A stretch of DNA of 64,000 bases, taken from positions 186,001 through 250,000 of IMG/VR virus record IMGVR_UViG_3300032236_001613; one strand, given 5' to 3'. This document shows positions 1 to 30,805 of this stretch, piece by piece (positions within the stretch are counted from its first letter, which is position 1; the number at the start of each line of letters is the position of its first letter). The notes under the pieces were generated by a model, which saw only the letters and a list, made by a program, of their open reading frames with translations, made no database searches and had not been told where the DNA came from. The translations under genes were made by a program, and so were the position numbers.

Positions 1-461
1 ATTTTAATGTTATGTTCTTTAATTAAATCTTCGGCCTTGGTTAAATCTAGATTAAGCGTTTCCAACTCAATATCAAGAAATACTGGCTCGAATCCTAACT
101 GTAGAGTAGGATTTAATGTAGTAGGAAATCCTGCAATAGGCATTAACACCTTTGTTCCTTTAGGTAAATGATGCCCGCGCTTACTAGTAAGGCTCGCCAT
201 CATAAGTAAATTCGAGCTCGATCCACTATTAGTAAGTATTCCGTGTTTCTTTCCAAAAAGACGAGGAAAGTGCCTTTCAAATTTTGTACTTTGATCCCCC
301 ATCACTAGCCATCCGCTTAATAGAGTTTCAACTGCCGCTACATATTCATCAGTTGAAAAATACGGTCCAGCATAGTTAACAAAATCTTTACCGGCTTCCC
401 AAGATTTTTGTTGTTGTTTTTCTTCAATATAGATTTTAATGTCTTCGAGTATCTTTTTCAT
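1..461 (-). CDS. DegT/RfbH-family PLP-dependent sugar dehydratase/aminotransferase (runs off the window start)
   Basis: Manual translation from ATG at 461: MKKILEDIK...YAGPYF...GWLVMG...TNSGSSSNLL...FPTTLNP...PVFLDI, typical of the family. Confidence 0.85.
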   Translation of the reverse strand, partial: MKKILEDIKIYIEEKQQQKSWEAGKDFVNYAGPYFSTDEYVAAVETLLSGWLVMGDQSTKFERHFPRLFGKKHGILTNSGSSSNLLMMASLTSKRGHHLPKGTKVLMPIAGFPTTLNPTLQLGFEPVFLDIELETLNLDLTKAEDLIKEHNIK

Positions 462-1180
462 ATTATAATATAATTCTTGTAATGATTTACTAATTCAATT
501 CTTGTTTTTAAATCAGTTGAAGGCCAATGTATTAACCAATCTCCAAATTGCCAATTTCCGTCAAATCCTAAGCGATCCCTTTGATCAGTATAATGATATA
601 ATTGATAATTAAATGAATTCATGTATCTTTGGGGAACTATTTTAACGATATTTTTATACTCCTCATTAATTTTAAGATCTGTATTTTTTTCAATAAATTG
701 CCATGCAGGATCCGTAGTTCCAGGAATTCCTAACATAGTAGCAATGCATTTTTGCTCTGTATCCCAAAATTTTAAAAAAGCTGGCTCTAGATGAATAATT
801 GTATCTAAAAAATTTAAACTTTCTGGGGAATTTTTAATTAATAAACTATCGGCGTTAACTCCATTAACATCGACTGCTATAATAAAATGGTGATCTTTTG
901 AAATTCTATCTTCAATTTTAATTGAAAAATTAGTGATCATCGAATCTGTCCCTGACCACCAAATCCACTCATACTCAGGATGTTCTCTCAAAATGTCTCT
1001 AGCAAAATGTATCTTTTCGAATCCGGTCATTAAAGAGCCGTTTCTAGATGTGGCAAAATTTGAATCTCTTGCATGTACTGCATATCCATGATATTTTGCA
1101 TACTCTACTTTATTCTGTTCCCACGTCAAATCAGCTAAAGGTTTATATCCAATATCGTGATGAGTAATTAATGCATACAT
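458..1180 (-). CDS. GT34 (GMA12/MNN10)-like glycosyltransferase
   Basis: NKVEYAKYHGY, EWIWWSGTDSMITN, DVNGVNADS, GDWLIHW; ATG at 1180 is a more likely start than 1213. Confidence 0.75.
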   Translation of the reverse strand: MYALITHHDIGYKPLADLTWEQNKVEYAKYHGYAVHARDSNFATSRNGSLMTGFEKIHFARDILREHPEYEWIWWSGTDSMITNFSIKIEDRISKDHHFIIAVDVNGVNADSLLIKNSPESLNFLDTIIHLEPAFLKFWDTEQKCIATMLGIPGTTDPAWQFIEKNTDLKINEEYKNIVKIVPQRYMNSFNYQLYHYTDQRDRLGFDGNWQFGDWLIHWPSTDLKTRIELVNHYKNYIII

Positions 1181-1995
1181 TAGAAATAAAACCCGTTTAT
1201 TCTTGGAAACCAAGTATCTCCGTATCCACCGTGTGGAGTTTTAGTTTGTTCGTAGTTTGAAATAATTTCACACCAATATGTTTTACCTAACCCTATAGCT
1301 ACGCTTAATGCAACACTTTGATTTCCGATAAATTGTTCGCATCCTTGTACATATCGAGCCATTTCTAATAAATCGTTAGTTTTCTGATATTGTATTTTAA
1401 TCTTAAAAAAATCTTCAAACTTAGAATGTTCTTCTTCCGTTCCTAAGAAAACTGCATAATCACCTAGCCCGTTATTAATCCATTCCTCCCATCCAGTTAC
1501 TTGTTGATCTCTTCCGTAAAGATATCTTTCCGTCCTGTTAACCACAATAGGCTTTCCAGATACACGTAATGGAGAAACTGGAGTCAACCAAGGTTCGTAT
1601 AACAATTTCCTTTTGATATCAATATTATGAATGTTTAATCCTTGTGTTAATGCGTAACATTCTGTCTGATTACCTTGCCAGCCTTTAATCAAATGGTATT
1701 TCCAATGGTCGCTAAAATCGTAATCAAACGTTTCACCGTTCCATACAGCGACTTTTTCTATATAATCTTGTGCTTCTAATAAAGGAGCTAATATATTATA
1801 ATCGTGTTGTGTTAATCTTCCAGATGCAGGACCGGCGTTTGGCCAACCTAACACGTTTTTTGCGTAATCGTCAAGAGCGTCAAGTTTCACATACATATTA
1901 CCGCCGCCTAACAGTTTTACTAAACATAAGCTGTAGATAGTATCACCAAAAGTGCCTAACGTATAAAAATTATTTACTTTCATTATTATTCCCAA
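1180..1995 (-). CDS. GT9/heptosyltransferase-like glycosyltransferase
   Basis: N-terminal GTFGDTIYSL and C-terminal LLEMARYVQGCEQFIGNQSVALSVAIGLGK. Confidence 0.6.
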   Translation of the reverse strand: MGIIMKVNNFYTLGTFGDTIYSLCLVKLLGGGNMYVKLDALDDYAKNVLGWPNAGPASGRLTQHDYNILAPLLEAQDYIEKVAVWNGETFDYDFSDHWKYHLIKGWQGNQTECYALTQGLNIHNIDIKRKLLYEPWLTPVSPLRVSGKPIVVNRTERYLYGRDQQVTGWEEWINNGLGDYAVFLGTEEEHSKFEDFFKIKIQYQKTNDLLEMARYVQGCEQFIGNQSVALSVAIGLGKTYWCEIISNYEQTKTPHGGYGDTWFPRINGFYF

Positions 1996-2052
1996 TTGAG
2001 GTTATATTGTAAACTATTTAATTAAGACTTACAAGCGAGAATAATATTTTGA

Positions 2053-2865
2053 TTAAGTTAATATTGTTCTATGAAACGCACTATCATAGTGATAAACACC
2101 AGGACGTCTATACCCTTTCCGAATCTTATCCCATAACCAGTTTAAATCATTTTGAATTTTTTCAAAATCAGGATCTCCAGGAAACGGCCATCTTTCTTTA
2201 TTGCAGATAGTAATACAGTTTGGATTAGTAACTATTCGAAAACCGACCTGACTAATTTTTTGACCTAACCATCCAGGAACGACTCTAGACGACCATTCCA
2301 TATCGTAAGGATCGGTGTGATACATTGACTCATCTAATGGTTCATACAACATCACATGCTTTTTACAAACCCAATACCCGCCGTCGAGACACATATAAGG
2401 AACAAAGCAATCAATGTCTCTGGGAATAGGTGTACACATTGGAATTTCTGGATATCCTGGAATTTGATTAAAACCTAATCTCCACCCATTACCATCAGCA
2501 TATTTGGTTTTTCCAAAAGATTTAGCTCGATTTCTATGTACACAAATATCCCAATCAATACCGAATTTTTCAAATTCAGTGTACCAATTACTATCAAATA
2601 AAACATAATCATGCATTACTACACAAACATCGTAACAGCTAGAAAAAACACCTTGATTCTTTTTTCTAGTTGTCCACGGCTTTTCTGTTATTGATTCATC
2701 AAAAGGAATATGAATGGTATTTTTTCTTTTAATGTTGTTTTTTAATCCGCCAATTAATAATATTTCATATTCTGGAATATTATTTGCTTCGATACTATCA
2801 ATAACTTGCTCAACACCTTCATCATTTGTGCCTGATGTAGTAATAACAAAAGAAATGCCTGTCAT
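2053..2865 (-). CDS. GT-A fold (GT2-like) glycosyltransferase
   Basis: ISFVITT start, KKNQGV, VVMHDYVLFD. Confidence 0.6.
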   Translation of the reverse strand: MTGISFVITTSGTNDEGVEQVIDSIEANNIPEYEILLIGGLKNNIKRKNTIHIPFDESITEKPWTTRKKNQGVFSSCYDVCVVMHDYVLFDSNWYTEFEKFGIDWDICVHRNRAKSFGKTKYADGNGWRLGFNQIPGYPEIPMCTPIPRDIDCFVPYMCLDGGYWVCKKHVMLYEPLDESMYHTDPYDMEWSSRVVPGWLGQKISQVGFRIVTNPNCITICNKERWPFPGDPDFEKIQNDLNWLWDKIRKGYRRPGVYHYDSAFHRTILT

Positions 2866-2903
2866 AATTCACCTTTATAAATAAAACTTCAAGGATATTT
2901 ATA

Positions 2904-4031
2904 ATGTCTAATCACGGTCTAAAATATTTTACTCGAGAAAACTGTTTAATAAACAATAATGAAAAAATCGAAGATATATACTCATTTAAAAAGTTTCCAA
3001 TTTTTATAAATTGTACCAGTGATGAAGATAACTTAAACGATCAATTTTATGATATGAACTGGGGTATCTCTGAATCAGGACATTTACAATTGATAGACTT
3101 GTTAAACCCTACACTAATTTATTCTAACTATCACACTACCGGAGTAGTTGGTAAAATTTGGGATAATCACCATAAAAAAATATTCGATTTTATAAATCAA
3201 GATAATTTTAATAGTGTTTTAGAAATTGGCGGCGCTAGCGGTAAGCTGGTAAAACATTTTTGTAATCTTAATAGAGAATTTAATTGGTCAATTATTGAAC
3301 CTTCGATCAAATTGTCAACCATTGATCATCGAGTGACATGCATATCGGCATTTTTTGAAGATTATTCTTTTAATAAAAAGTTTGATACAATAGTGCATTC
3401 TCATTGCTTAGAACATGTATACAATCCTATTGTTTTTCTTAATAAAGTACACTCTTTACTTAACGACAATGGATACCAATATATTTCTATACCTAATATG
3501 AAATATGGATTAGAAAATAACTTTACTAATACTTTAAGTTTTGAGCATACTTTTTATATTGATGAATTTGTTTTAGAGTACTTACTAAATAAAACAGGGT
3601 TTATAGTTGTAGACAAAATAGTAGAAAACCATTCGATTTTTGTTAAAGCTAAAAAACAGAATAAATTGAATATATTACAAAAGGACTTTTTGTATATTAA
3701 AGAACTATTTTACAAATATATGTCTAATTTAAACAATGATGTTGTTACAATTAATTCAAAAATTAAGGATCAAAACTTTTATTTGTTCGGCGCACATATG
3801 TTTTCTTTATTATTATTAAATCTCGGATTGTACAACAAGAATATTGAATGTATTCTAGATAACGATACACAAAAGCAAAATAAAAGATTATATGGTACAC
3901 CGTATTTTGTAAAATCTATAGATTGTTTGAAAAATAAAGAATCACCTATTGTTGTTTTAAGAGCTGGAATTTATACTGATGAAATTAAAGAATCGATAGC
4001 AAAAGTCAATTCAACAACAATTTTTATATAA
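2904..4031 (+). CDS. Class I SAM-dependent (sugar C-methyltransferase-like) methyltransferase
   Basis: VLEIGGASG, FDTIVHSHCLEHV, FEH, C-terminal LFGA/ILDND domain. Confidence 0.8.
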   Translation: MSNHGLKYFTRENCLINNNEKIEDIYSFKKFPIFINCTSDEDNLNDQFYDMNWGISESGHLQLIDLLNPTLIYSNYHTTGVVGKIWDNHHKKIFDFINQDNFNSVLEIGGASGKLVKHFCNLNREFNWSIIEPSIKLSTIDHRVTCISAFFEDYSFNKKFDTIVHSHCLEHVYNPIVFLNKVHSLLNDNGYQYISIPNMKYGLENNFTNTLSFEHTFYIDEFVLEYLLNKTGFIVVDKIVENHSIFVKAKKQNKLNILQKDFLYIKELFYKYMSNLNNDVVTINSKIKDQNFYLFGAHMFSLLLLNLGLYNKNIECILDNDTQKQNKRLYGTPYFVKSIDCLKNKESPIVVLRAGIYTDEIKESIAKVNSTTIFI

Positions 4032-4040
4032 GGAAATACA

Positions 4041-5087
4041 ATGATTATTTGGGTAAATTGTAAAATAACAGACGTTCCATTAAATTCTTCCCCGTTGCGA
4101 TTTAATCTTAGAAAAGAAAGTAGATTTGATATAGCTCGGTATACTTTTGCTAGTTACGCAGCATTAGATTCATTAACAAGTAAAATCATTTTTAATTTAG
4201 AACTTGGAAACGAATTTTTAAATCGCAAAGAAGAAATGGAAAATTGGATAAAAAGTTTGTTTCCGCCGGAAAAATTGTCTATTTCGTGGTACAGATGCAA
4301 TAATCTAACACAATGGAAAGAAGTGCAAACAGTAATTAACAATATAAACGACGATCTTTTATATCTTGCAGGAAATGACGATCATGTTTTTTTTGATAAT
4401 AGTTTAGATTTATATAAAAAAGGATTAAACATATTAGATAACGATCCTGACGAAGATACCGCTCTAGTAAATTGTCATTATCCTGAAAGTTTAAGAGAAG
4501 CATTAAATCATCCTGAGCATCAGCTAACCGATTGTAAAAATTTTGTAAGTATAATACATCGACATTCGATTGGAATCGTTGTTATTAAAAAAGCACTATA
4601 TAATAGATTTTTATCTAAGGTAACAGACCCTGATAAAATAATGTTTCGTATGGATGATTGGCAAATAGACGGATACACAAAAATTTTTATCCCAACAAAA
4701 GAAATAAGCAAACACTTCGATGGGTACTCCCATGTAAATATCGATCCAAATGTTTGCCCTCCATTAGAAATCCCGCCTGGGTTTTTTGAAAAGAATGTAA
4801 CTATTAGATACGGGTTTGACGACTACGATCCGGAATGTGTAAATATTAATCCATTATCAACTAATTTACATGCTATCGATCCTAACGGAGCTGATTATAA
4901 ATTTTGTTTAAACGATATCCCTATTTTTTGGAGACCATTTATTAAACGTATAGTAATAGCTACTGAGTTAGATTCTCAAAAAATGTTCAAAGCTCGTAAT
5001 CAGCATTATATTGATTTAAGTTCGCCTGTGTTTTTTGGAAAAAAAATAGAGATTCCTCAGGTATGGATTGAAAATCATTTAGTGTAA
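4041..5087 (+). CDS. Hypothetical, possibly GT-A-like protein
   Basis: YLAGNDDHVF motif and glycan-cluster context. Confidence 0.4.
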   Translation: MIIWVNCKITDVPLNSSPLRFNLRKESRFDIARYTFASYAALDSLTSKIIFNLELGNEFLNRKEEMENWIKSLFPPEKLSISWYRCNNLTQWKEVQTVINNINDDLLYLAGNDDHVFFDNSLDLYKKGLNILDNDPDEDTALVNCHYPESLREALNHPEHQLTDCKNFVSIIHRHSIGIVVIKKALYNRFLSKVTDPDKIMFRMDDWQIDGYTKIFIPTKEISKHFDGYSHVNIDPNVCPPLEIPPGFFEKNVTIRYGFDDYDPECVNINPLSTNLHAIDPNGADYKFCLNDIPIFWRPFIKRIVIATELDSQKMFKARNQHYIDLSSPVFFGKKIEIPQVWIENHLV

Positions 5088-5133
5088 AATAAAAAAATCC
5101 AACAAATAAATAAAAGCCAAGAAGGTTTACACA

Positions 5134-6225
5134 ATGAATATAGTAATTCCTATGGTAGGTGCAGGGTCTCGATTTGCTAAAGAAGGTTTTCTCGAACCAA
5201 AACCTTTGATTGATGTCTTAGGTAAAACATTAATCGAGCATAGTATTGATAGCTTTAATGTTGCAGGTAAATTTATTTTTATTACTAGAGATTTTCATAA
5301 TCCCGAACATAATAAAAATTTATCTGAAATCTTAAAAAAGAAAAGACCTGAATCAAAAGAAATACGCTTAAAAAGATTAACAAGCGGAGCAGCCGAATCG
5401 GTATTAGCTGCAAAAGAATTGATTAATAACGATGAACCATTAATCATTTATAATTGCGATCAGCTTATTAATTGGAATCCAGAAGATTTTTTAAAGTTTA
5501 TCGTCAAGAAAAAACCCGATACGGCATTAGTTTTATATGACAGTACTGATCCAAAAAATAGTTTTGTCGAAATTATCCAAGGTAAAATTGTTAAATTTGT
5601 AGAAAAAGTGGTTATTTCAAATCATGCTTCTATAGGGTTTCATTATTGGGCACATGGTAGTGATTTTGTAAAAAGTGCAGAACAATTAATTGATAATTTT
5701 AGAGAAGAAGGCAAAAAAGAATGTTACATCAGCGGAACATTTGATTATTTAAAAGATAAAGTTATACTTCCTTATCATGTTCCGAATAGTGAATTCATTC
5801 CATTAGGAACTCCTGAGGATGTTGCAAAATATGTAGGTAAAGTTAAAGAGTTTACAAATGATAAACCTAAAAGCATCTTTATCGACATTGATGGTACAAT
5901 ATTAAAGCATATGCATACTATTTCTGACGTATATAAAGAAGAAGCTGTAGTATTGCCAGGAGTAATAGAAAAGTTAAATGAATGGGATAGTCAGGGATAT
6001 AAAATAATTCTCACAACTGCAAGAAAAGAGAGCACTAGAGAACACACTGAAGCACAACTTAGAAAATTCGGAATAGCATGGGATTATTTAATAATGGGCG
6101 TTGGAGGAAGAAGATATTTAATTAATGACAAATTGTCAGCAACTGATGCAGATCGTGCAGTTTCGATTAATGTTGTCACTAATGATGGGTTTAAAACTAC
6201 TAACTGGAAAAAACACGATCTATGA
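5134..6225 (+). CDS. Sugar nucleotidyltransferase fused to a C-terminal HAD phosphatase
   Basis: IVIPMVGAGSRF...PKPLI at the N-terminus; FIDIDGT, LTTAR, INDK at the C-terminus. Confidence 0.85.
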   Translation: MNIVIPMVGAGSRFAKEGFLEPKPLIDVLGKTLIEHSIDSFNVAGKFIFITRDFHNPEHNKNLSEILKKKRPESKEIRLKRLTSGAAESVLAAKELINNDEPLIIYNCDQLINWNPEDFLKFIVKKKPDTALVLYDSTDPKNSFVEIIQGKIVKFVEKVVISNHASIGFHYWAHGSDFVKSAEQLIDNFREEGKKECYISGTFDYLKDKVILPYHVPNSEFIPLGTPEDVAKYVGKVKEFTNDKPKSIFIDIDGTILKHMHTISDVYKEEAVVLPGVIEKLNEWDSQGYKIILTTARKESTREHTEAQLRKFGIAWDYLIMGVGGRRYLINDKLSATDADRAVSINVVTNDGFKTTNWKKHDL

Positions 6226-6545
6226 AAATAGTAAAATTAAAAGATATGAAAGACGGATGGTTTGTCGGCGGATTTCAACCTACAGCGTATTATACTAAGG
6301 ATGTCGAAGTAAATTATAGAATTCATCCTAAAGGGCAACTTTGGGATGTGCATTATCATAGCACTGTTACTGAAATTACTTTACTAATAAAAGGTAAAAT
6401 GATTATTCAAGGTAAAGAATTAACAGGCGGCGATATTTTTATTATCGAACCTTGGGAAATTACCGACCCAGTTTTTCTAGAAGACTGCGAAACTATTTGT
6501 GTTAAATTACCTAGTATAAATGATAAAAAAGTAGTTAAAAGTTAG
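6222..6545 (+). CDS. Cupin-domain protein
   Basis: GWFVGGF, HYH...E, GDIFIIEPWE; overlaps the upstream stop. Confidence 0.75.
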   Translation: MKIVKLKDMKDGWFVGGFQPTAYYTKDVEVNYRIHPKGQLWDVHYHSTVTEITLLIKGKMIIQGKELTGGDIFIIEPWEITDPVFLEDCETICVKLPSINDKKVVKS

Positions 6546-6550
6546 TAAAC

Positions 6551-7678
6551 ATGGATACCGTACAGAGAAACAATGATATTGTTTATAATAATAATGATTT
6601 AGAGCTCTTATATACATTTAAAAAATTCCCGGTATTTATGGGATGTACAGAACAAGAAATTAAAGACGATGTTTACTATGATTTAAATTTTTTTATCAGC
6701 CGTAAAAGCGGAATGATACAAATAAATCCAGTTGCACCGTTAGAACTAGTGTATCAGACAGAGCATCAATCCGGAGCAGTCGGAGCTGGTTGGTTTAAAC
6801 ATCATAACACATTTGCTAAATTTATAAAAGATTATAATCCTTGCAATGTATTTGAAATTGGCGGCGGACATGGATATTTAAGTAATGAATACTATACGTT
6901 AGATAGCAAAATAAATTGGACTATGATAGAACCTAATCCTTCTATTGTTGAATCTAATGCTACTGTTATTAAAGGATTTTTTAAAACTGTAGATCAGATA
7001 CCCAATCCAGTTGATGCAGTAGTTCATAGTCATTTCTTCGAGCATTTACATTATCCTGCTCAATTTGTTCAAATCTTGTCTTGTTTAAAGAACGGTATAA
7101 AAGTATTTTTTAGTATTCCTGATCTTAAAAAACAACTGGAACAAAAATATACTAATGTATTAAACTTCGAACATACATTTTATTGTACCGACGACTACGT
7201 CGAATGGATTTGGAATCACTATGGATTTAAACTATTAAAAAAGATTTATTTTGAAAACGGACATAGCATTTTTTATGCATTTGAAAAACAAGATACTACA
7301 AACACAGCCGAATATATTAATTCATATGAAACAAATAAAACTATATACTTAAACTATATTGATTATTACAAGAATTTGGTTAAAGATTTAAACAAGAGAA
7401 TTGAAGAAGAAACTAGCCCTGTTTTTATTTTCGGAGCCCATGCATCAACACAGTATCTACTTGCTTATGGCCTAAATGCTGATAAAATTAATGGAATTAT
7501 TGATAATAGTTCTCTTAAAGAAGGTAAACGTTTGTACGGAACTAAGTTTATAAGTCAAAAAACAAGTATATTAAAGGAAATTGAAAACCCTGTAGTAATA
7601 GTACGTGTAGGTATACAAAACGACGAAATTAAAAAAGATATATTAAAAAATATTAATTCAAATGTTACTTTTATTTAA
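6551..7678 (+). CDS. Class I SAM-dependent methyltransferase, paralog of 2904..4031
   Basis: VFEIGGGHG, VVHSHFFEH, FEH, IFGA, IIDNS, KRLYGT. Confidence 0.8.
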   Translation: MDTVQRNNDIVYNNNDLELLYTFKKFPVFMGCTEQEIKDDVYYDLNFFISRKSGMIQINPVAPLELVYQTEHQSGAVGAGWFKHHNTFAKFIKDYNPCNVFEIGGGHGYLSNEYYTLDSKINWTMIEPNPSIVESNATVIKGFFKTVDQIPNPVDAVVHSHFFEHLHYPAQFVQILSCLKNGIKVFFSIPDLKKQLEQKYTNVLNFEHTFYCTDDYVEWIWNHYGFKLLKKIYFENGHSIFYAFEKQDTTNTAEYINSYETNKTIYLNYIDYYKNLVKDLNKRIEEETSPVFIFGAHASTQYLLAYGLNADKINGIIDNSSLKEGKRLYGTKFISQKTSILKEIENPVVIVRVGIQNDEIKKDILKNINSNVTFI

Positions 7679-7681
7679 AGG

Positions 7682-7710
7682 TTGACAGCAGAGATAAATA
7701 AACGTATATT
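7682..7710 (+). promoter_or_regulatory. Sigma70-type promoter heading the tRNA array
   Basis: TTGACA-N17-TATATT. Confidence 0.8.
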
Positions 7711-7757
7711 AAATGACTACGATGCAATGCGTAGACGTTAATAAACAAGGAATAAAG

Positions 7758-7898
7758 ATGATTGCAACGACATTTACTACTCATAATAGTAAGACCTTTA
7801 AAGCAGGTTCTATACCCGCTTGGTCGTCAATTATGAATTATTCATATGATCGCGGTCAAGAAGGGAGTCCAAGGTCCGGAAGTGAGATGTTAGAGTAA
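7758..7898 (+). CDS. Putative attenuator leader peptide (46 aa; an in-frame ATG at 7722 is also possible)
   Basis: AAGGA SD before ATG 7758; stop codon lies in the antiterminator loop; 33 distinct codons in 46. Confidence 0.6.
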   Translation: MIATTFTTHNSKTFKAGSIPAWSSIMNYSYDRGQEGSPRSGSEMLE

Positions 7899-7935
7899 CA
7901 ACAAAACATCTAAAAACACTTAAAGGACCCTAGGA
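7868..7935 (+). promoter_or_regulatory. Antiterminator hairpin overlapping the terminator 5' arm
   Basis: GGTCC 7873-77/GGACC 7925-29, AAGTG 7880-84/CACTT 7917-21, AGATGTT 7885-91/AACATCT 7905-11. Confidence 0.65.
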
Positions 7936-7962
7936 TTAAGAACCCTGGGGTTTTTTGTTTTT
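7926..7962 (+). terminator. Intrinsic terminator (attenuator)
   Basis: GACCCTAGG/CCTGGGGTT stem followed by TTTTGTTTTT. Confidence 0.8.
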
Positions 7963-7963
7963 A

Positions 7964-8072
7964 GCAGTGTGAAAATAAGGTAACGAGGACCTTGCAGCGC
8001 ACTATAAACATGCTGTAAACGGGCGGAACCGGGGATCAAACCTGTGGCGAAAACGCAGGGAGTAAAATCCGG
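7964..8072 (+). ncRNA. Unidentified structured RNA
   Basis: Stems AAGGT/ACCTT, GCAGCG/TGCTGT, CCTGTG/CGCAGG, CCGG/CCGG; possible AGTGT/GCACT pseudoknot. Confidence 0.5.
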
Positions 8073-8122
8073 AATTTATATACTAAAGCATACCCAGTGC
8101 AGTGTTCTTTAGTATATAAATT
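8073..8122 (+). promoter_or_regulatory. Long hairpin, candidate RNase III processing site before the first tRNA
   Basis: Perfect 16-bp inverted repeat AATTTATATACTAAAG/CTTTAGTATATAAATT. Confidence 0.5.
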
Positions 8123-8126
8123 AATT

Positions 8127-8211
8127 GGGTAAGCGCCGGAGTGAGAGAGCCGGATTTGACTGTAAATCAAACGTCCCGACTGAGTAGGTGCGAATCCTAC
8201 CTTACCCACCA
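8127..8211 (+). tRNA. tRNA-Tyr(GTA)
   Basis: TTTGA-CTGTAAA-TCAAA, long variable arm, T-loop TGCGAAT, CCA. Confidence 0.9.
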
Positions 8212-8217
8212 AATAAT

Positions 8218-8321
8218 GCGGCAGTAAGTGCGTAATGGGCTAATGGTGGCCAATCCTGTCTACATGGATCAAATGTAACGGTTGCACCTTGATGTAGGTT
8301 CGAATCCTATCTGCTGCACCA
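8218..8321 (+). ncRNA. Atypical 104-nt tRNA-like gene, possible CTA anticodon
   Basis: Acceptor GCGGCAG/CTGCTGC-A-CCA and canonical T arm; irregular D and anticodon region. Confidence 0.6.
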
Positions 8322-8407
8322 CATTGCAACGGTTCTACCATCGTTAATCGGTAGCGCATACTTGGATGCGAGAAAAGACCTTTTACGTCGACCAAGACTA
8401 ATTTTAT

Positions 8408-8485
8408 GCTCCCATAGTTTAGAAGGGCCCAGAACATCCGATTCTCAGTCGGAAAACGCAGGTTCGAATCCTGCCGGGAGCGCCA
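8408..8485 (+). tRNA. tRNA-Glu(CTC)
   Basis: TCCGA-TTCTCAG-TCGGA, CCA. Confidence 0.9.
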
Positions 8486-8529
8486 TTTTACTTAATAAAT
8501 ATTACAAATTTTAAAATAAAGGGTTACTA

Positions 8530-9135
8530 ATGAATATCTCAGATTACAAACAATTTATAAAAGATACAGGCACTTTAATACAAATTGGTGCTTTTGATGG
8601 TGTTGCTTGCGAAGACTCAGGGTTTAGAGAATTAGTACTTTATAAAAATTATAATGCTCATTTGGTTGAACCAGTTATAGATTTTTTTCAGGCGTTACAA
8701 AAAAACTATAGTAATGCTACGAGTAATGTTCGATTTTATAATCAAGCAATTTATACAGAAAATGGAGAATTACCTTTTTTTAAAAATTACACTGACCCAT
8801 TACAATGTACTTTTATAAGAGAAAATGTAGCTGAATATCATGGGCAAACAATACTAGTACAGTCACGAACTTTTGATACTTTTTTACAAGAAAATAACAT
8901 TAATGAAATCGAAGGATTATTTATTGATGCAGAAGGTGCCGAAGATACTATACTCCAACAGCTTTTTGAAAAAACGAATATCAGACCTAATATAATTCGT
9001 TATGAATGGCCACATTTGCCTGACCCTGTAAACACAATCAGATACATTATGTCTTATGGCTATACTGTTTCTCCCTGCATCTATTCAGGCGGTCGTGTTG
9101 ATAACATTTGTATTAAAAACGACCTTTTAGTTTAA
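8530..9135 (+). CDS. FkbM-family methyltransferase
   Basis: IQIGAFDG, LVEP, LFIDAEGAE, IRYE. Confidence 0.8.
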   Translation: MNISDYKQFIKDTGTLIQIGAFDGVACEDSGFRELVLYKNYNAHLVEPVIDFFQALQKNYSNATSNVRFYNQAIYTENGELPFFKNYTDPLQCTFIRENVAEYHGQTILVQSRTFDTFLQENNINEIEGLFIDAEGAEDTILQQLFEKTNIRPNIIRYEWPHLPDPVNTIRYIMSYGYTVSPCIYSGGRVDNICIKNDLLV

Positions 9136-11541: not shown

Positions 11542-11599
11542 TAGGATGCTTCCAGCAAATAAAAAACTTTTCTTGAAAAAAAGCCAAAACAGCATCCTG
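11542..11599 (+). ncRNA. Anticodon-display RNA copy 1 (TGA stem-loop)
   Basis: AGGATGCT/AGCATCCT closing stem, CAGCAA, internal CTTTT-CTTGAAA-AAAAG. Confidence 0.7.
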
Positions 11600-11609
11600 T
11601 TTAATTTTA

Positions 11610-11704
11610 CCTCGATAGCACAGGTGTGCGGCTAGGTCTTATAAACCTGGGAGAGTTGCCAGATTAGCGACAACGGGAAGGATCGTTACCTTCATCGAGG
11701 ACCA
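11610..11704 (+). tRNA. Non-canonical tRNA with TAT anticodon and long variable arm
   Basis: CCTCGAT/ATCGAGG-A-CCA; 6-bp stem CTAGGT-CTTATAA-ACCTGG; T-loop ATCGTTA. Confidence 0.75.
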
Positions 11705-12366: not shown

Positions 12367-12442
12367 AGTAGTGTAGCATAGTGGCTAATGCAGCACCTTC
12401 ATACGGTGTTTACCATCGGTTCGAGTCCGATCACTACTACCA
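12367..12442 (+). tRNA. tRNA-CAT (elongator Met or Ile2)
   Basis: GCACC-TTCATAC-GGTGT, paired 1:72, CCA. Confidence 0.88.
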
Positions 12443-12446
12443 GTTT

Positions 12447-12561
12447 TAGGATACCTACAGCAACATAAATTACTCATGCTAAGAGAGAGGTCGTTGGTTC
12501 AAGTCCAACCTAGTCTTAGGACTAGTAGCTCAGTTGGTAGAGCACTAAAATGTGTATCCTG
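12447..12561 (+). ncRNA. Anticodon-display RNA copy 2 containing a circularly permuted tRNA (GCT loop)
   Basis: AGGATAC/GTATCCT closing stem; order is anticodon loop, variable loop, T arm, loop-closed acceptor stem, D arm. Confidence 0.8.
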
Positions 12562-12570
12562 TTTTATTCG

Positions 12571-12648
12571 GCACCGGTGGCAGAGTGGCCCAATGCAAGA
12601 GTCTGCAAAACTCTAAAGTCGTCAGTTCGAATCTGACCCGGTGCTCCA
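12571..12648 (+). tRNA. tRNA-Cys(GCA)
   Basis: AGAGT-CTGCAAA-ACTCT, U73, CCA. Confidence 0.93.
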
Positions 12649-13228: not shown

Positions 13229-13289
13229 TAGGATGCCTACAGCAAATTTAAAAATCAAAATGTCAATTTGAAAACAAATGCGCATCCTG
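13229..13289 (+). ncRNA. Anticodon-display RNA copy 3 (GTC stem-loop)
   Basis: AGGATGC/GCATCCT closing stem, CTACAGCAA, internal TCAAA-ATGTCAA-TTTGA. Confidence 0.7.
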
Positions 13290-13735: not shown

Positions 13736-14278
13736 ATGCTTAGTAAAAATATTAGTTCAGAGACAATCGAAAAATTAATTGATTCAGGTTTAAAAACCTC
13801 AGAAATTGCATCTAAGCTCGGTATCTCTACTGCAACAGTTTCTTATTGGAAAAAGAAACTCGGAAAAGAACTTAGTAATATCAAACATGATTGGAAAAAA
13901 ATTCAAGAAGCCCACAACAATGGGTCTACTTATTCTCAATTATACAAAGAGTTTGGTGTTACTAAAAGATCATTACAGAAAGCTAGAGATCGAGGAGATT
14001 TCAAGGTTAGACAGCGTAAAAAATTGTCAAAAGATGACGCTAAAATTAGAAAAAGAATTATATGCAGAGAAGCGTGGATGCGGTATTATAGTAGAAAAAA
14101 ATATCAAACTCCGGCTGATGAAGATATTAAAAAATTACAAGAATTTTATGCTAATTGCCCGGTTGGTTATGAAGTAGATCACATCATACCTATAAGTAAA
14201 GGCGGATTACATACATTGTCGAATCTTCAATACTTAACTATTAAAGAGAATAGACAAAAAGGTAATAAGATATTATAA
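13736..14278 (+). CDS. HTH-HNH homing endonuclease
   Basis: N-terminal SEIASKLGISTATVSYW; YEVDHIIPISKGGLHTLSNLQYLTIKENRQK. Confidence 0.88.
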   Translation: MLSKNISSETIEKLIDSGLKTSEIASKLGISTATVSYWKKKLGKELSNIKHDWKKIQEAHNNGSTYSQLYKEFGVTKRSLQKARDRGDFKVRQRKKLSKDDAKIRKRIICREAWMRYYSRKKYQTPADEDIKKLQEFYANCPVGYEVDHIIPISKGGLHTLSNLQYLTIKENRQKGNKIL

Positions 14279-14766: not shown

Positions 14767-14854
14767 GGATGGTTGCCTGAGCGGTTAAAGGAGCGGGTTG
14801 CTAACCCGTCGCGGTGAAAACTGCGCATAGGTTCGAATCCTATACCATCCGCCA
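14767..14854 (+). tRNA. tRNA-Ser(GCT)
   Basis: GCGGG-TTGCTAA-CCCGT, long variable arm, CCA. Confidence 0.94.
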
Positions 14855-17431: not shown

Positions 17432-17914
17432 ATGAAATATTGCCCGAAGTGTAATAATGAACATAATAAACCTGGAATGTTTTGCTCAAGATCATGTGCA
17501 AATAGTCGTGTTTGGTCAGAAGAGACCAATTTAAAAAGATCAATAACATCAAAGGGTAATTCCCCGTGGAATAAAGGTATATCCACCGGAATTAACGAAG
17601 AAAGAAATAAAGTTATACGATTAGTTCGATTGGAAAAAAATAGAAATAAATTTTTAAACGGGTTGATAACCGAAAGATCGGCAATAAGGAAACATCTTAC
17701 AAGAGAACATGGTTATTTCTGTTCTATTTGTTCTATTTCAGAATGGCAAGGACAAAAAATTACATTACAAGTAGATCATATAGATGGAAACGCAGGAAAC
17801 AATTTACCTACAAATCTAAGATTAATTTGTCCGAATTGTCATAGTCAAACTAAAACATTTGGAGCAAGAAATAAAGGTTCAGGAAGAGCATCTAGAGGTC
17901 TTCCGTTAAGTTAA
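17432..17914 (+). CDS. HNH homing endonuclease with N-terminal zinc finger
   Basis: CPKC..FCSRSC, PWNKG, LQVDHIDGNAGNNLPTNLRLICPNCH. Confidence 0.9.
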   Translation: MKYCPKCNNEHNKPGMFCSRSCANSRVWSEETNLKRSITSKGNSPWNKGISTGINEERNKVIRLVRLEKNRNKFLNGLITERSAIRKHLTREHGYFCSICSISEWQGQKITLQVDHIDGNAGNNLPTNLRLICPNCHSQTKTFGARNKGSGRASRGLPLS

Positions 17915-27386: not shown

Positions 27387-27917
27387 ATGTATACTAGTAC
27401 AAAGTTTTTTAAAGAAATAGGTCCCTGCGCTTATCGCAATTGGAAATCAGATACAGATTGTTATATGCTTCACGGCTATGACCGCAGTTTTAAGTTTGTG
27501 TTTGGTGCTAGCCATCTAGACAAGCAAGGGTTTGTTGTAGATTTTGGCGGGCTTAAAGCTATTAAGCGACAACTAGAAGACTGGTTTGATCATACTGTAA
27601 TTTTACAAGCCGATGATCCCTTAGTGAATACTTTTAGAGAGCTAACAGCTAAAGGTCACTGCAAATTGCAGACTTTTCCGCTTATTAGCTGCGAAGGACT
27701 TGCAGAGTATGTAGGCGAGTATGTTGACTATATGCTCCATGAAGCAAATGGAGGACGTAATTGGGTCGTTAGTTGCGAAATGATCGAAGCTGAAAAGAAT
27801 AGCGCCATTTATAGTGTAAGACCTGATGATCCTGATCGTATGCTTTGGCACGATTTGCAAGCACTTAACGTCAGTATGGAAGAGGAAGCCGGTAAAATTA
27901 AATTTGAGGATCTGTAA
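27387..27917 (+). CDS. queD: 6-carboxytetrahydropterin synthase (QueD/PTPS family)
   Basis: C..LHGY, VVDFG.LK, FDH, CEGLA. Confidence 0.8.
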
Positions 27918-28849
27918 TGAAAAAAATTTTAGTTACCGGTGGTGCCGGATTTTTAGGCAGTCATCTGTGTGATCGTTTAGTAACACAAGGTCATCACGTA
28001 CTTTGTGTTGATAATTATTTTACAGGTAGTAAGAAAAATATTGAGCCGTTACTTCGATATCCTAATTTTGAAGTAATTCGTCAGGATGTTTGCTTTCCTC
28101 TCTACGTTGAAGTGGATGAGATTTATAATCTTGCTTGTCCTGCAAGTCCTGTATATTATCAACATGATCCTATACAGACCACCAAGACCAGTATCCTAGG
28201 CGCATACCATCTATTAGGGCTAGCCAAACGTACAGGTGCAAAGATTTTGCAAGCATCTACTAGCGAAGTGTACGGCGATCCTTTAGAACATCCACAGCGT
28301 GAAGAATACTGGGGTAATGTTAATCCGATTGGAATTCGTAGTTGCTACGATGAAGGTAAACGTGCAGCAGAAACATTATTTTTTGACTATCATAGACAGC
28401 ATAATGTTCGTATTAAGGTTGCACGTATTTTTAATACGTACGGCCCACGTATGTCAGCAAATGATGGTCGAGTAGTCAGCAACTTTATTGTTCAGGCATT
28501 AAACGGTCAAGCTATTACTATATACGGTGATGGAAGCCAAACACGTAGTTTCTGCTATGTCAGCGATCTAGTAGATGGGTTGATAGCGTTAATGAACACT
28601 AAAGATTCCATTACAGGGCCAATTAACCTGGGTAATCCTAGAGAATTTACTATGCTAGAACTAGCAGAAAAAGTTATTGCAGAAACACAAACTACTAGCA
28701 AACTAGTTTTTAAACCATTGCCCGGCGATGATCCAAAACAACGCCGACCGGATATTACTCGAGCGCAGTTATTCCTAGATTGGCATCCGGAGATTTCTTT
28801 AGAAGATGGATTAGTTGATACTGTTAAATATTTTAAGACCGTGATTTGA
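27917..28849 (+). CDS. UDP-glucuronate decarboxylase (extended SDR)
   Basis: [40 protein letters not shown]. Confidence 0.93.
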
Positions 28850-29724: not shown

Positions 29725-29779
29725 ACTATGATCAAATCCGCATTGTAATAGTGCAATGCGATTACTTCCTGAGGTAGTC

Positions 29780-30805
29780 ATGAAACGAATTGGATTTGCA
29801 TGTAAGTGGATTGATCGTCCTGATCAATGCGACGGTATCTCTGCTAAAGATGATGCTAAACAATACAATACTGCTGGCACTACTGTAGCATGGCTTAATC
29901 GGCAAACTCGAGAAGTAGCCGAACAGAAGCTATGGGACATTATGCAATATAACATTGCAGCAACTAAAAGACTCGTTCAACGAGTAGGAGACTTAGATAA
30001 TAGTCTTCGAATGGTTAGACTTTCTAGTGATTTGCTTCCTGTTTATACCGAATCTAGTTGGGCTTACTTTTGGCGACAGTCTTATGTTAGGCAGTATTGT
30101 GAAAGCAAGTTTGCTGAAGTAGGAAATATTGCTCGTGATCGTAATGTTAGGCTTTCTTTTCACCCTGGACAGTTTACTGTTCTTGCTAGCGACAATCCAG
30201 ATATCGTTGAACGTAGTATAGAAGAATTTGAGTATCATGCTGACATGGCTAGATGGATGGGCTACGGTCAAAAGTTTCAAGACTTTAAAATTAATGTTCA
30301 TATTGCCGGTCGTTTAGGTGCACAAGGCATTCGAGATGTTTATCCGCGTTTGAGCACCGAAGCACGTAACTGTATTACTATTGAAAATGAGGAAATGTCA
30401 CATGGGCTGGATGATTGTTTGTCTCTTGGTGAGTTGTTGCCTGTGGTGCTCGATATCCACCATCACTGGATCCGAGAGGGAGAGTATATCGAGCTCGGAG
30501 ATATTCGTGTCCAACGTGTGCTGGACTCTTGGCGTGGGGTGCGCCCTACTCTCCATTATTCTGTTAGCCGTGAAGATTGTCTTATTAATCATTCACCCGA
30601 ACATTTGCCTGATGCTAGGTTGTTATTAGAAGCTGGACACAAAAAACAAAAGCTCCGAGCACATAGTGACTTTTATTGGAATGATTCCGTCAACAAATGG
30701 GCTTTAAGCTTTTTAGAAAATTTCGATATCATGTGCGAGGCAAAGGGCAAGAATCTTGCTAGCTTTGCCTTACACAATCAAGCAAAACAATTAGACTACC
30801 TTTAA
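29780..30805 (+). CDS. uvsE: UV damage endonuclease
   Basis: RIGFACK, RLSS, SFHPGQF, IENEE, LDIHHH, RAHSD, EAKGK. Confidence 0.92.
   Translation: MKRIGFACKWIDRPDQCDGISAKDDAKQYNTAGTTVAWLNRQTREVAEQKLWDIMQYNIAATKRLVQRVGDLDNSLRMVRLSSDLLPVYTESSWAYFWRQSYVRQYCESKFAEVGNIARDRNVRLSFHPGQFTVLASDNPDIVERSIEEFEYHADMARWMGYGQKFQDFKINVHIAGRLGAQGIRDVYPRLSTEARNCITIENEEMSHGLDDCLSLGELLPVVLDIHHHWIREGEYIELGDIRVQRVLDSWRGVRPTLHYSVSREDCLINHSPEHLPDARLLLEAGHKKQKLRAHSDFYWNDSVNKWALSFLENFDIMCEAKGKNLASFALHNQAKQLDYL

What the first reader, a model, noticed from the sequence alone, without database searches (positions are those of the whole stretch)
12447..12561. Complete circularly permuted tRNA inside the scaffold
Seen: the order is CTC-ATGCTAA-GAGAG (12473-87), variable loop AGGTC, T arm GTTGG-TTCAAGT-CCAAC, acceptor stem CTAGTC-TTAG-GACTAG closed by a loop (no CCA), TA, D arm GCTC-AGTTGGTA-GAGC, A, CT (12545-46). 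Joining that CT to the CTC gives CTCTC, a perfect partner for GAGAG, so the tRNA is opened at positions 28/29. Known: bacterial YrlA Y RNAs have a permuted T-acceptor-D module but replace the anticodon arm; permuted tRNA genes are described in algae and archaea. Here the anticodon loop is kept, and a Ser anticodon sits on a short-variable-loop body. Inference: an unchargeable full tRNA mimic, or a precursor for ligation and re-opening.
Basis: partly seen in the sequence, partly recalled or inferred. Interest (0 to 1): 0.9.

Follow-up and report, generated by a model that had tools for sequence, protein, structure and literature searches.

The report
tRNA-shaped phage Ro-partner RNA
A small RNA gene in a giant phage's tRNA cluster folds as a complete but rearranged, closed-ended tRNA look-alike held in a conserved stem, and it belongs to a large, apparently undescribed family of phage RNAs that travel with a Ro60-like protein.

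Summary
Window 12447-12561 (+) holds a terminal stem enclosing every tRNA part, permuted at position 28/29, with the acceptor stem closed by a UUAG loop.

It is not chance. More than 90 relatives in viral and bacterial contigs keep the same architecture. Covariation supports every helix, including the split anticodon stem. The 7-nt loop keeps U33, R37 and A38 while the "anticodon" triplet varies freely.

It is not a standard YrlA: 44 bits against a gathering score of 69, and ACAGCAA replaces the GNCGAA Ro motif. The terminal stem + ACAGCAA + CUGUU module marks a family that co-locates and co-orients with DUF2828/DUF7788 proteins. I show these are Ro60-fold homologues.

The window's own 328-kb contig encodes this protein 42 kb upstream on the same strand. 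The window also holds two insert-less "mini" copies of the scaffold (11544-11599, 13231-13289). Their best Rfam match is Dictyostelium Class I RNA.

Best reading: a Y-RNA-like RNP in which the scaffold binds the Ro-like protein and the uncharged tRNA mimic recruits or decoys a tRNA-binding factor. Maturation into a working tRNA is unsupported.

New variant of a known kind.

The parts
12447..12454 (+). 5' strand of the terminal (scaffold) stem, UAGGAUAC
   Evidence: Pairs with 12554-12561. The helix is 87-93% paired with 4-6 pair types per position in relatives.
12457..12463 (+). ACAGCAA single-strand motif next to the stem. It is the family signature and the presumed protein contact.
   Evidence: CAGCAA is invariant in A1, partly because the search pattern required it. 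It recurs in independent model hits and in insert-less scaffold RNAs next to DUF2828 genes.
12473..12485 (+). Anticodon-arm mimic: CUC (29-31), 7-nt loop AUGCUAA (32-38, U33, A37, A38), GAG (39-41)
12486..12487 (+). Positions 42-43 (AG). They pair with C12545 and U12546 (positions 27-28) to complete the 5-bp anticodon stem across the permutation point.
   Evidence: Helix 3 is 91-92% paired with CG, AU, GC, UA and GU variants.
12488..12492 (+). 5-nt variable loop AGGUC (G46, C48)
   Evidence: Relatives carry xGGUC.
12493..12509 (+). T arm
12510..12525 (+). Acceptor stem closed by a UUAG loop (6 bp; in register for a 7th G-U pair); no free ends and no CCA
   Evidence: A closed acceptor was a selection criterion for the seed set.
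12526..12546 (+). U8 A9, D arm (12528-43), A26, C27 U28
12554..12564 (+). 3' strand of the terminal stem (GUAUCC) followed by the conserved UGUUU tail
11544..11599 (+). Second scaffold RNA ('mini'): same stem + CCAGCAA + CUGUU, A/U-rich insert, no tRNA domain. It lies between tRNA-Ser and tRNA-Ile.
   Evidence: The best Rfam match is Dicty_Class_I_RNA, 30.3 bits, E 1.5e-4.
13231..13289 (+). Third scaffold RNA ('mini'), between tRNA-Leu and tRNA-Trp
   Evidence: Dicty_Class_I_RNA scores 27.5 bits.
12367..12442 (+). Flanking tRNA-Met. Its encoded CCA end lies 4 nt before the element.
12571..12648 (+). Flanking tRNA-Cys, starting 9 nt after the element. RNase P cleavage here would set the element's 3' end (inferred).

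Best explanation
The element is the tRNA-shaped member of a set of phage-encoded, Y-RNA-like small RNAs. The set works with a Ro60-like protein of the DUF2828/DUF7788 family.

Shown:
- The RNA has two modules. The first is a terminal stem with a 5' ACAGCAA motif and a 3' CUGUU tail. The second is an inserted, complete, circularly permuted tRNA whose acceptor end is a closed loop.
- The first module also occurs alone or with other inserts, twice more in this window.
- RNAs with this module cluster next to DUF2828 genes, on the same strand.
- DUF2828 has the Ro60 ring + vWA fold.
- This phage's own genome encodes the protein.

Inferred:
- The RNA is co-transcribed with the tRNA cluster. Its ends are cut by the tRNA-processing enzymes that release the flanking tRNA-Met and tRNA-Cys.
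- The Ro-like protein binds the stem/ACAGCAA module, as Ro60 binds the Y RNA stem.
- The tRNA domain has no free ends, so it is unchargeable and protected from exonucleases. It presents a full L-shape including an anticodon loop, and so tethers or decoys a tRNA-binding factor.
- That factor is most plausibly an enzyme of tRNA damage or repair during the phage-host conflict: a host anticodon nuclease, an RNA ligase or an exoribonuclease. This parallels YrlA-Rsr in RNA-repair operons and Y RNA tethering Ro60 to PNPase.

It is not made into a working tRNA.
For: - Anatomy and covariation. Anticodon-loop signature.
- The covariance model R1 scores the window at 122 bits, though the window is a seed. 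It finds non-seed relatives at 60-116 bits.
- From the RNA side, a DUF2828 ORF lies in the flank of 22 of 54 CAGCAA-type loci.
- From the protein side, about 10 of 80 DUF2828-anchored loci have an R1 hit above 60 bits. All 20 R1 matches at E<=0.001 lie on the gene's strand, most just upstream.
- Strict scaffold modules: 112 on the gene strand against 5 opposite in one set of 80 loci, 151 against 6 in a second set, and 4 in block-shuffled DNA.
- DUF2828 is a Ro60 homologue. hhalign against phage TROVE Ro60 gives 96% probability, E 3e-9. The AF2 model has pLDDT 83. The top four Foldseek PDB hits are Ro60 structures 9KOP, 2I91, 9L5Y and 2NVO, E 6e-10 to 2e-8 over the full length.
- The window's contig carries the gene at L363:2998-4398, about 42 kb upstream on the same strand. 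A fourth scaffold RNA lies 90 nt upstream of it, and an Rv2179c-like 3'-5' exoribonuclease gene lies 2.3 kb upstream.
- In GAP32, Eneladusvirus and Munch the DUF2828 gene sits beside an RNA ligase gene.
- Precedent: YrlA is a tRNA mimic bound by Ro60 (PMC4201824; bioRxiv 10.1101/312249). A phage Ro60 binds phage Y-like RNAs and forms a complex with host PNPase (PMC12135203).
Against: - There are no expression, end-mapping or binding data. The protein-RNA pairing rests on co-occurrence only.
- In this genome the protein gene is 42 kb away, not adjacent.
- The cloverleaf is not the MFE fold.
- About a third of independent relatives lack a 7-nt loop as aligned.
- The 'anticodon' is not conserved, so any anticodon-specific role would have to differ from phage to phage.
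- The identity of the recruited or decoyed factor is a guess.
Confidence: 0.65

Rival explanations
1. A true permuted tRNA gene. The transcript is circularised at the 28/29 junction, opened at the acceptor loop by RNase P or RNase Z, given CCA, and used as tRNA-Ser(GCU), as in Cyanidioschyzon and some archaea.
For: - All tRNA parts are present in register.
- ARAGORN accepts the re-joined sequence.
- M. smegmatis YrlA is cut by RNase P and receives CCA in vivo (PMC4201824).
- Related jumbo phages carry RNA ligases.
Against: - The flanks do not form a bulge-helix-bulge. They form a conserved 6-8 bp stem + ACAGCAA + CUGUU module that also exists without any tRNA insert.
- The 'anticodon' differs freely among close relatives and includes A34 triplets that are unusual in bacteria.
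- A Ser identity would need a long variable arm, and the phage already has tRNA-Ser(gct) at 14767-14854.
- The acceptor loop is only 4 nt.
- The ARAGORN call is non-specific.
Confidence: 0.05
2. An ordinary YrlA that serves a canonical TROVE-domain Ro60 (Rsr). This would be already-known biology.
For: - The YrlA model matches 12463-12572 with local E 5e-9.
- Phage YrlAs next to TROVE genes share the same tRNA core and the same split anticodon hairpin.
Against: - The score is 44.1 bits against a gathering score of 69, and only the tRNA core aligns.
- The GNCGAAN0-1G motif is absent and replaced by ACAGCAA.
- No TROVE ORF lies in the 64-kb window.
- The contig encodes a DUF2828 protein instead.
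- In the motif-free pattern search, TROVE-adjacent elements lacked CAGCAA.
- The rest of the 328-kb contig was not scanned for TROVE.
Confidence: 0.12
3. Non-functional debris of tandem tRNA genes: the 3' part of one tRNA fused to the 5' part of the next.
For: - It lies in a 25-tRNA cluster.
- YrlA is proposed to have arisen from dimeric tRNA transcripts (bioRxiv 10.1101/312249).
Against: - The acceptor strands are self-complementary.
- The architecture is conserved with compensatory changes in more than 90 divergent contigs from phages of many hosts.
- It is linked to a specific protein family.
Confidence: 0.03
4. A protein-independent decoy or sponge. The closed tRNA mimic alone titrates a host tRNA-targeting defence nuclease or a tRNA-modifying enzyme, and the terminal stem only stabilises the ends.
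For: - A complete L-shape with an anticodon loop and no free ends.
- Variable 'anticodons' among phages would fit tuning to different nucleases.
Against: - The terminal module has conserved sequence (ACAGCAA, CUGUU), not just pairing.
- That module is shared with insert-less RNAs.
- It tracks DUF2828 genes.
Confidence: 0.1

Closest known systems
YrlA (Rfam RF02553), bacterial and phage Y RNA-like tRNA mimics bound by Ro60/Rsr
   Same: - Permuted order T arm, closed acceptor hairpin, D arm.
- tRNA tertiary-interaction nucleotides are present.
- The 5' and 3' ends pair in a stem that leaves the anticodon-stem position.
- The partner is a Ro60-fold protein.
- Many YrlAs also have a hairpin ('V') upstream of the T arm.
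   Different: - Scores below the family threshold: 44 against 69 bits.
- ACAGCAA + CUGUU replace the GNCGAA motif.
- The partner subfamily is DUF2828/DUF7788, not Pfam TROVE.
- Here the hairpin is shown by covariation to complete a 5-bp anticodon stem, with a 7-nt U33/R37/A38 loop. Published descriptions say YrlA lacks the anticodon loop or call the hairpin a variable arm.
- The gene sits inside a tRNA cluster, 42 kb from the protein gene.
Dictyostelium Class I RNAs (Rfam RF01414)
   Same: - A short terminal stem starting with G.
- An adjacent single-stranded motif, CCUUACAGCAA.
- A variable A/U-rich interior.
- A conserved end, CUGU (PMC7919456).
- This is the only notable Rfam match for all three scaffolds in the window.
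   Different: - Scores are below threshold: 15 bits for the tRNA-bearing element, 27-33 bits for minis, against a gathering score of 41.5.
- Class I RNAs are eukaryotic, 42-65 nt and DUSE-promoted, and carry no tRNA insert.
- Their reported direct binder is the RRM protein Rnp1A.
- Whether dictyostelids have DUF2828 proteins was not tested. The resemblance may be homology or convergence.
Circularly permuted tRNA genes of Cyanidioschyzon merolae, prasinophytes and some archaea
   Same: The 3' half is encoded upstream of the 5' half, and the acceptor ends are joined in the primary transcript.
   Different: - Those have a bulge-helix-bulge at the junction, cut by the splicing endonuclease.
- They mature into charged tRNAs with conserved identity.
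- Here there is no BHB, the anticodon is not conserved, and the host is bacterial.
Metazoan and Deinococcus Y RNAs with Ro60; Thermus phage phiLo Ro60 with Yrl1/Yrl2
   Same: - Modular logic: a terminal stem binds the Ro ring and a variable inner module binds an effector.
- Several RNAs serve one protein.
- Phage-encoded examples exist.
   Different: - Different recognition motif.
- The inner module here is a full tRNA mimic.
Two-piece tmRNA from permuted ssrA genes (own knowledge, not tested here)
   Same: A bacterial or phage tRNA-like RNA encoded in circularly permuted order.
   Different: tmRNA is cleaved into two pieces, has a free CCA end, is charged with alanine and carries a tag reading frame.

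Membership tests
YrlA (RF02553) | tRNA-like module in the order T arm, closed acceptor stem-loop, D arm | tested here: met
   with covariation.
YrlA (RF02553) | Reaches the Rfam gathering score (69 bits) over the full model | tested here: not met
   44.1 bits. The outer helices align with non-pairs. No hit at gathering threshold.
YrlA (RF02553) | GNCGAAN0-1G motif near the 5' end (PMC4201824) | tested here: not met
   The 5' region reads ...CUACAGCAACAU.... The family consensus is ACAGCAA.
YrlA (RF02553) | Encoded within about 4 kb of, and on the same strand as, a TROVE-domain Ro60 gene | tested here: not met
   No TROVE ORF in the 64 kb. A Ro60-fold DUF2828 gene lies 42 kb upstream on the same strand.
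YrlA (RF02553) | Bound by Ro60 in vivo; carries Psi55 and D modifications | not testable with these tools
   Needs immunoprecipitation and modification mapping.
Dictyostelium Class I RNA (RF01414) | Terminal stem + adjacent ACAGCAA-containing motif + CUG(U) 3' end | tested here: met
   Alignments. Features as described in PMC7919456.
Dictyostelium Class I RNA (RF01414) | Reaches the gathering score of 41.5 bits; length 42-65 nt | tested here: not met
   The element scores 15.0 bits and is 115 nt. Window minis score 30.3 and 27.5 bits. The best phage mini seen scores 32.5 bits.
Dictyostelium Class I RNA (RF01414) | Dictyostelid genome context with a DUSE promoter | tested here: not met
   The context is a tailed-phage contig: DNA polymerase B related to jumbo phages, tail-fibre domains and bacterial-type tRNAs.
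Permuted tRNA genes (algal/archaeal type) | 3' half upstream of 5' half, all tRNA parts present | tested here: met
Permuted tRNA genes (algal/archaeal type) | Bulge-helix-bulge (3-4-3) at the junction formed by leader and trailer | tested here: not met
   By inspection. The trailer could give AAA, AUGU, stem. The leader has 8 nt and 6 nt where 3 and 0 are required.
Permuted tRNA genes (algal/archaeal type) | Conserved anticodon or identity among orthologues; matured to a CCA-ended, charged tRNA | tested here: not met
   More than 20 different triplets occur among relatives. Maturation itself is not testable here.
DUF2828-associated scaffold RNAs (family defined here, model R1) | Terminal stem + CAGCAA + CUGUU enclosing a permuted tRNA | tested here: met
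   R1 scores 122 bits, though the window is a seed. Non-seed relatives score 60-116 bits.
DUF2828-associated scaffold RNAs (family defined here, model R1) | Same genome encodes a DUF2828/DUF7788 protein | tested here: met
   L363:2998-4398 on contig IMGVR_UViG_3300032236_001613 matches PF25043 at 6e-51 and PF11443 at 7e-33. The window maps to the same contig.

The most novel reading that the evidence does not exclude
The terminal-stem + ACAGCAA + CUGU module is the cognate ligand of the DUF2828 branch of the Ro60 superfamily. It defines one ancient RNA class found in phages, in bacteria and, as the 'Class I RNAs' thought unique to Dictyostelia, in amoebae. On that shared handle phages mount interchangeable cargo domains. 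One cargo is a closed, exonuclease-proof, complete tRNA whose anticodon loop is retuned from phage to phage to bait the host's tRNA-targeting defence, or to guide tRNA repair.
Probability: 0.2. Interest if true: 0.9.

Novelty: new variant of a known kind. Interest (0 to 1): 0.78.

Why it matters
Ro60-Y RNA particles are conserved from bacteria to humans, yet what the tRNA-like domain of bacterial Y RNAs binds is an open question.

This finding matters in four ways:
1. It extends the system to a second, much more widespread phage protein branch. DUF2828 matches were found in 711 phage records, including Felix O1, KVP40 and GAP32.
2. It gives that 'domain of unknown function' a candidate RNA ligand with a defined recognition module.
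3. It shows that the tRNA mimic can be complete, anticodon loop included. That narrows the candidate effectors to proteins that read the whole tRNA.
4. It names tractable model phages in which unannotated RNA genes sit between tRNAs.

It also offers a testable lead on the unexplained Dictyostelium Class I RNAs.

Tried and rejected
- **MFE folding** does not recover the cloverleaf (z -1.66) and is uninformative.
- **ARAGORN on re-joined sequences** is positive in 43/46. It is also positive in 79% of controls with a shuffled anticodon segment, so I dropped it as evidence.
- **Megablast of the region against phage records** gave only tRNA fragments.
- **Sequence-profile search of DUF2828 against PDB sequences** found nothing. 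Fold comparison was needed.
- **tblastn with one TROVE Ro60** missed whole groups such as the mycobacteriophages, so its negative results were not used.
- **The first attempts to find the partner gene in the window's own contig failed**. The third attempt succeeded.
- **Promoter and terminator scans** were at background level.
- **Literature searches** for DUF2828, PF11443, DUF7788 and Ro-like phage proteins found no description of an RNA partner. Two reviews by Sim and Wolin were not held.
- **The three unnamed Class I RNA-interacting proteins of Dictyostelium** could not be identified from the held paper or its supplements.
I repeated it with IMG/VR sequences.

Full report
**1. Setting.** The window is low-GC (about 31-41%) and carries 25-26 tRNA genes on the + strand between about 8.1 and 18.0 kb.
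- Its family-B DNA polymerase is 43-50% identical to those of jumbo myoviruses: Phosso, Atu_ph07, GAP32, Eneladusvirus and Munch.
- Other ORFs give tail-fibre chaperone, He_PIG, subtilase, ClpB-like, UvdE and sugar-modification domains.
- The window equals positions 186,001-250,000 of IMG/VR contig IMGVR_UViG_3300032236_001613, which is 328,068 nt long.
- The finding lies between tRNA-Met (12367-12442) and tRNA-Cys (12571-12648).

**2. The observation.**
- A 6-8 bp terminal stem (12447/49-54 with 12554-59/61) encloses, in order:
  - ACAGCAA (12457-63);
  - a 3-bp hairpin with a 7-nt loop AUGCUAA;
  - two further bases (AG) that pair with the CU following the D arm;
  - a 5-nt variable loop;
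  - a T arm;
  - an acceptor stem closed by UUAG;
  - UA, a D arm and A26.
- Joined across 12546/12473, this is a canonical 76-nt class-I tRNA with all the usual tertiary-pair nucleotides.
- The standard tRNA tools do not see it, because of the permutation.
- Thermodynamic folding alone does not recover it: -24.5 kcal/mol for the cloverleaf against -31.1 for the MFE.

**3. Is it more than chance?** A pattern for the T loop, 15-30 nt and the D arm found many viral contigs. Most were tandem tRNAs. About 20 had a self-complementary acceptor hairpin.
- Parsing gave 72 distinct closed-acceptor elements. In 53 of them all five anticodon-stem pairs can form.
  - In 45 the stem is split, with 1-4 pairs from the strand after the D arm and the rest from a local hairpin with a 7-nt loop.
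  - In 8 the post-D strand supplies all five pairs.
Shuffles give 62% and slid partners at most 42%.
  - The anticodon hairpin pairs in 80% of cells and the split 2-bp helix in 91%.
  - Both show four or five pair types per position.
- A covariance model (R1) then found 46 further, non-seed elements in DUF2828-anchored loci and in bacterial or MAG genomes.
  - On these the figures are 94.7%, 82.8% and 92.3%. That alignment is fitted to the model.
- The loop carries the anticodon-loop signature. U33 is 83-90%, purine-37 is 98-100% and A38 is 87-97%. Positions 34-36 take more than 20 different triplets.
- About one third of the independent hits do not align with a 7-nt loop.
- ARAGORN's acceptance of the re-joined sequences is not evidence. 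It also accepts 79% of controls with a shuffled anticodon segment.

**4. Relation to YrlA.** The Rfam YrlA model matches 12463-12572 at 44.1 bits. The gathering score is 69 and the local E-value is 5e-9. Good alignment is confined to the T-acceptor-D core.
- Elements of the same core in Caulobacter phage CcrPW and several IMG/VR contigs lie next to TROVE-domain Ro60 genes.
- Those elements have G(N)CG(A/U)A-type 5' motifs. Seven of the eight also have the split anticodon hairpin.
- Chen et al. 2014 describe a fourth, less conserved 'V' stem-loop upstream of the T arm in many YrlAs. They map it to the variable arm (PMC4201824).
- The Salmonella crystal-structure preprint states that YrlA lacks the anticodon loop. 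It says most YrlAs resemble circularly permuted tRNAs, and it raises possible processing (bioRxiv 10.1101/312249).
- So the permuted-tRNA idea is not new. What the covariation adds is this: the hairpin, together with the two post-D bases, completes a 5-bp anticodon stem with a genuine anticodon-type loop.

**5. The scaffold and its partner.** The window element lacks GNCGAA and instead has ACAGCAA.
- In 22 of 54 CAGCAA-type loci the flank encodes a 470-520-aa protein with Pfam DUF2828 (PF11443) + DUF7788 (PF25043).
- Starting from the protein instead gives the same link.
  - About 10 of 80 DUF2828-anchored loci have an R1 hit above 60 bits.
  - All 20 R1 matches at E<=0.001 lie on the gene's strand, most just upstream.
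- A strict search for 'G-initiated 6-bp stem, 2-4 nt, CAGCAA..., complementary strand, UG' gave these counts:

| Set | Gene strand | Opposite strand |
|---|---|---|
| Set A (80 loci) | 112 | 5 |
| Set B (80 loci) | 151 | 6 |
| Set B, block-shuffled | 4 | not scanned |

- The modules come in size classes of about 50-70, 100-120, 140-180 and 240-260 nt. The same handle therefore carries different inserts, and the permuted tRNA is one of them.
- The window has three such RNAs: 11544-11599 and 13231-13289 (both minis) and the finding. Each is wedged 6-10 nt from the flanking tRNAs.
- Felix O1 has four unannotated ones among its tRNAs, just downstream of its DUF2828 gene. KVP40 has two.

**6. DUF2828 is a Ro60 homologue.**
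- Profile-profile comparison with phage TROVE Ro60s gives 96% probability and E 3e-9. It covers the last ring repeats and the vWA/MIDAS domain.
- An AlphaFold2 model has mean pLDDT 83 and pTM 0.78.
- Its four best PDB matches are Ro60 structures, over the full length: Thermus phage phiLo, Xenopus and Deinococcus.
- tblastn finds DUF2828 proteins in 711 phage records of many hosts. They are annotated 'RNA-binding protein' or 'Ro-like RNA binding protein'.
- In GAP32, Eneladusvirus and Munch the gene is beside an RNA ligase gene. In GAP32 the tRNA-like RNA lies about 203 kb away.

**7. The window's own phage has the protein.** The gene is L363:2998-4398, contig positions 154,915-156,315, + strand. 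It matches PF25043 at 6e-51 and PF11443 at 7e-33.
- It lies about 42 kb upstream of the element.
- A fourth scaffold RNA (106 nt) sits 90 nt upstream of it.
- An Rv2179c-like 3'-5' exoribonuclease gene lies 2.3 kb upstream.

**8. Mechanism.**
- Shown: the two-module anatomy, its conservation, the co-occurrence and co-orientation with a Ro60-fold protein, and the presence of that protein in this genome.
- Inferred from the Ro60/Y RNA precedent (PMC4201824, PMC12135203):
  - the protein binds the stem/ACAGCAA/CUGUU handle;
  - the closed tRNA domain is unchargeable and has no ends for exonucleases, and it recruits or decoys a tRNA-recognising factor.
- The RNA-ligase and exoribonuclease neighbours and the tRNA-cluster setting point to tRNA damage and repair in phage-host conflict. 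This last step is a hypothesis.
- Maturation into a functional tRNA is unlikely, for four reasons:
  - there is no BHB;
  - the handle is conserved and shared with insert-less RNAs;
  - the anticodon varies freely;
  - a real tRNA-Ser(gct) is already present.

**9. An unexpected resemblance.** The only other notable Rfam match for the three scaffolds is Dictyostelium Class I RNA (RF01414).
- Scores are 15 bits for the tRNA-bearing one, 30.3 and 27.5 bits for the minis, and 32.5 bits for another phage mini. The gathering score is 41.5.
- Class I RNAs are 42-65 nt. They have a short terminal stem, an adjacent 11-nt motif containing ACAGCAA, a conserved AAG start and a conserved CUGU end. They are reported as unique to dictyostelids and their mechanism is unknown (PMC7919456).
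- The feature-by-feature match is striking. I could not test whether dictyostelids encode DUF2828 proteins, so homology against convergence is open.

**10. Distribution.** The CAGCAA-anchored pattern occurs in only 24 stretches of 596 Gb of bacterial and archaeal genomes.
- Nearly all are true elements by R1.
- Eleven lie beside DUF2828 genes and two beside TROVE genes. They are probably prophages or phage contigs binned in MAGs.

**11. Verdict.**
- The element is a conserved, complete, closed tRNA mimic on a Ro-partner handle.
- It is related to YrlA but fails its defining tests.
- It belongs to a large family that, as far as the searchable literature shows, has not been described.

Noticed in passing
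window 11544-11599 and 13231-13289 (+): Two further copies of the scaffold (AGGAUGC, N2, CAGCAA, A/U-rich insert, GCAUCCUGUUU) with no tRNA domain. Each sits 6-10 nt from the flanking tRNAs. Their best Rfam match is Dictyostelium Class I RNA, at 30.3 and 27.5 bits.
   Followed up: yes
L363:2801-2908 (same contig as the window, about contig 154.7 kb): A fourth scaffold RNA of 106 nt lies 90 nt upstream of the phage's DUF2828 gene. Its insert contains a T-loop-like hairpin. An Rv2179c-like 3'-5' exoribonuclease gene is at L363:129-650.
   Followed up: partly
L252 (Salmonella phage Felix O1, NC_005282) 7771-7837, 7938-7995, 8392-8459, 8479-8603: Four unannotated scaffold RNAs lie between annotated tRNAs, just downstream of the DUF2828 gene (ORF42). 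The last carries a diverged tRNA-like insert (R1 49 bits). KVP40 (L253) has two modules in its tRNA cluster.
   Followed up: partly
L254, L255, L256 (GAP32, Erwinia pEa_SNUABM_47, Salmonella phage Munch): In these jumbo phages the DUF2828 gene is immediately downstream of an RNA ligase gene. This echoes the Rsr-YrlA-RtcB arrangement in bacteria.
   Followed up: no
L001 (Caulobacter phage CcrPW) 986-1096, 1182-1278, 1484-1593: Three tandem sub-threshold YrlA-like hits (30-33 bits) lie upstream of the TROVE-like gene. All are unannotated in the record.
   Followed up: partly
window 12457-12460 vs 12559-12562: The ACAG of the conserved 5' motif is complementary to the conserved 3' CUGU tail. They sit at opposite ends of the terminal helix, so pairing in cis looks unlikely. 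Pairing in trans (dimers) or joint protein recognition is possible.
   Followed up: no
window 11610-11704 (+): ARAGORN calls a 95-nt tRNA-Ile(tat) with the anticodon at position 31. The Rfam tRNA model does not report it at gathering score. It may be an intron-containing or aberrant tRNA. Conversely, Rfam reports a tRNA at 8127-8208 (42 bits) that ARAGORN omits.
   Followed up: no
window 13736-14278 and 17432-17914 (+): HNH endonuclease ORFs are interspersed in the tRNA cluster, as in Felix O1.
   Followed up: no
window 458-9135 and 27917-28849: A block of sugar-modification genes: GT34-type glycosyltransferase, three or four methyltransferases, an NTP-transferase/HAD fusion and an epimerase/dehydratase. 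More epimerases lie next to the DUF2828 gene in L363.
   Followed up: no
window 54171-56444 (+) and 29756-30805 (+): A full-length ClpB-like two-ring AAA+ chaperone and a UvdE UV-damage endonuclease are encoded by the phage.
   Followed up: no
L345, L348, L262 (MAG and IMG/VR loci): Two to four tRNA-like scaffold RNAs occur in tandem in one locus (R1 53-88 bits each). Some genomes therefore carry several tRNA mimics with different 'anticodons'.
   Followed up: no
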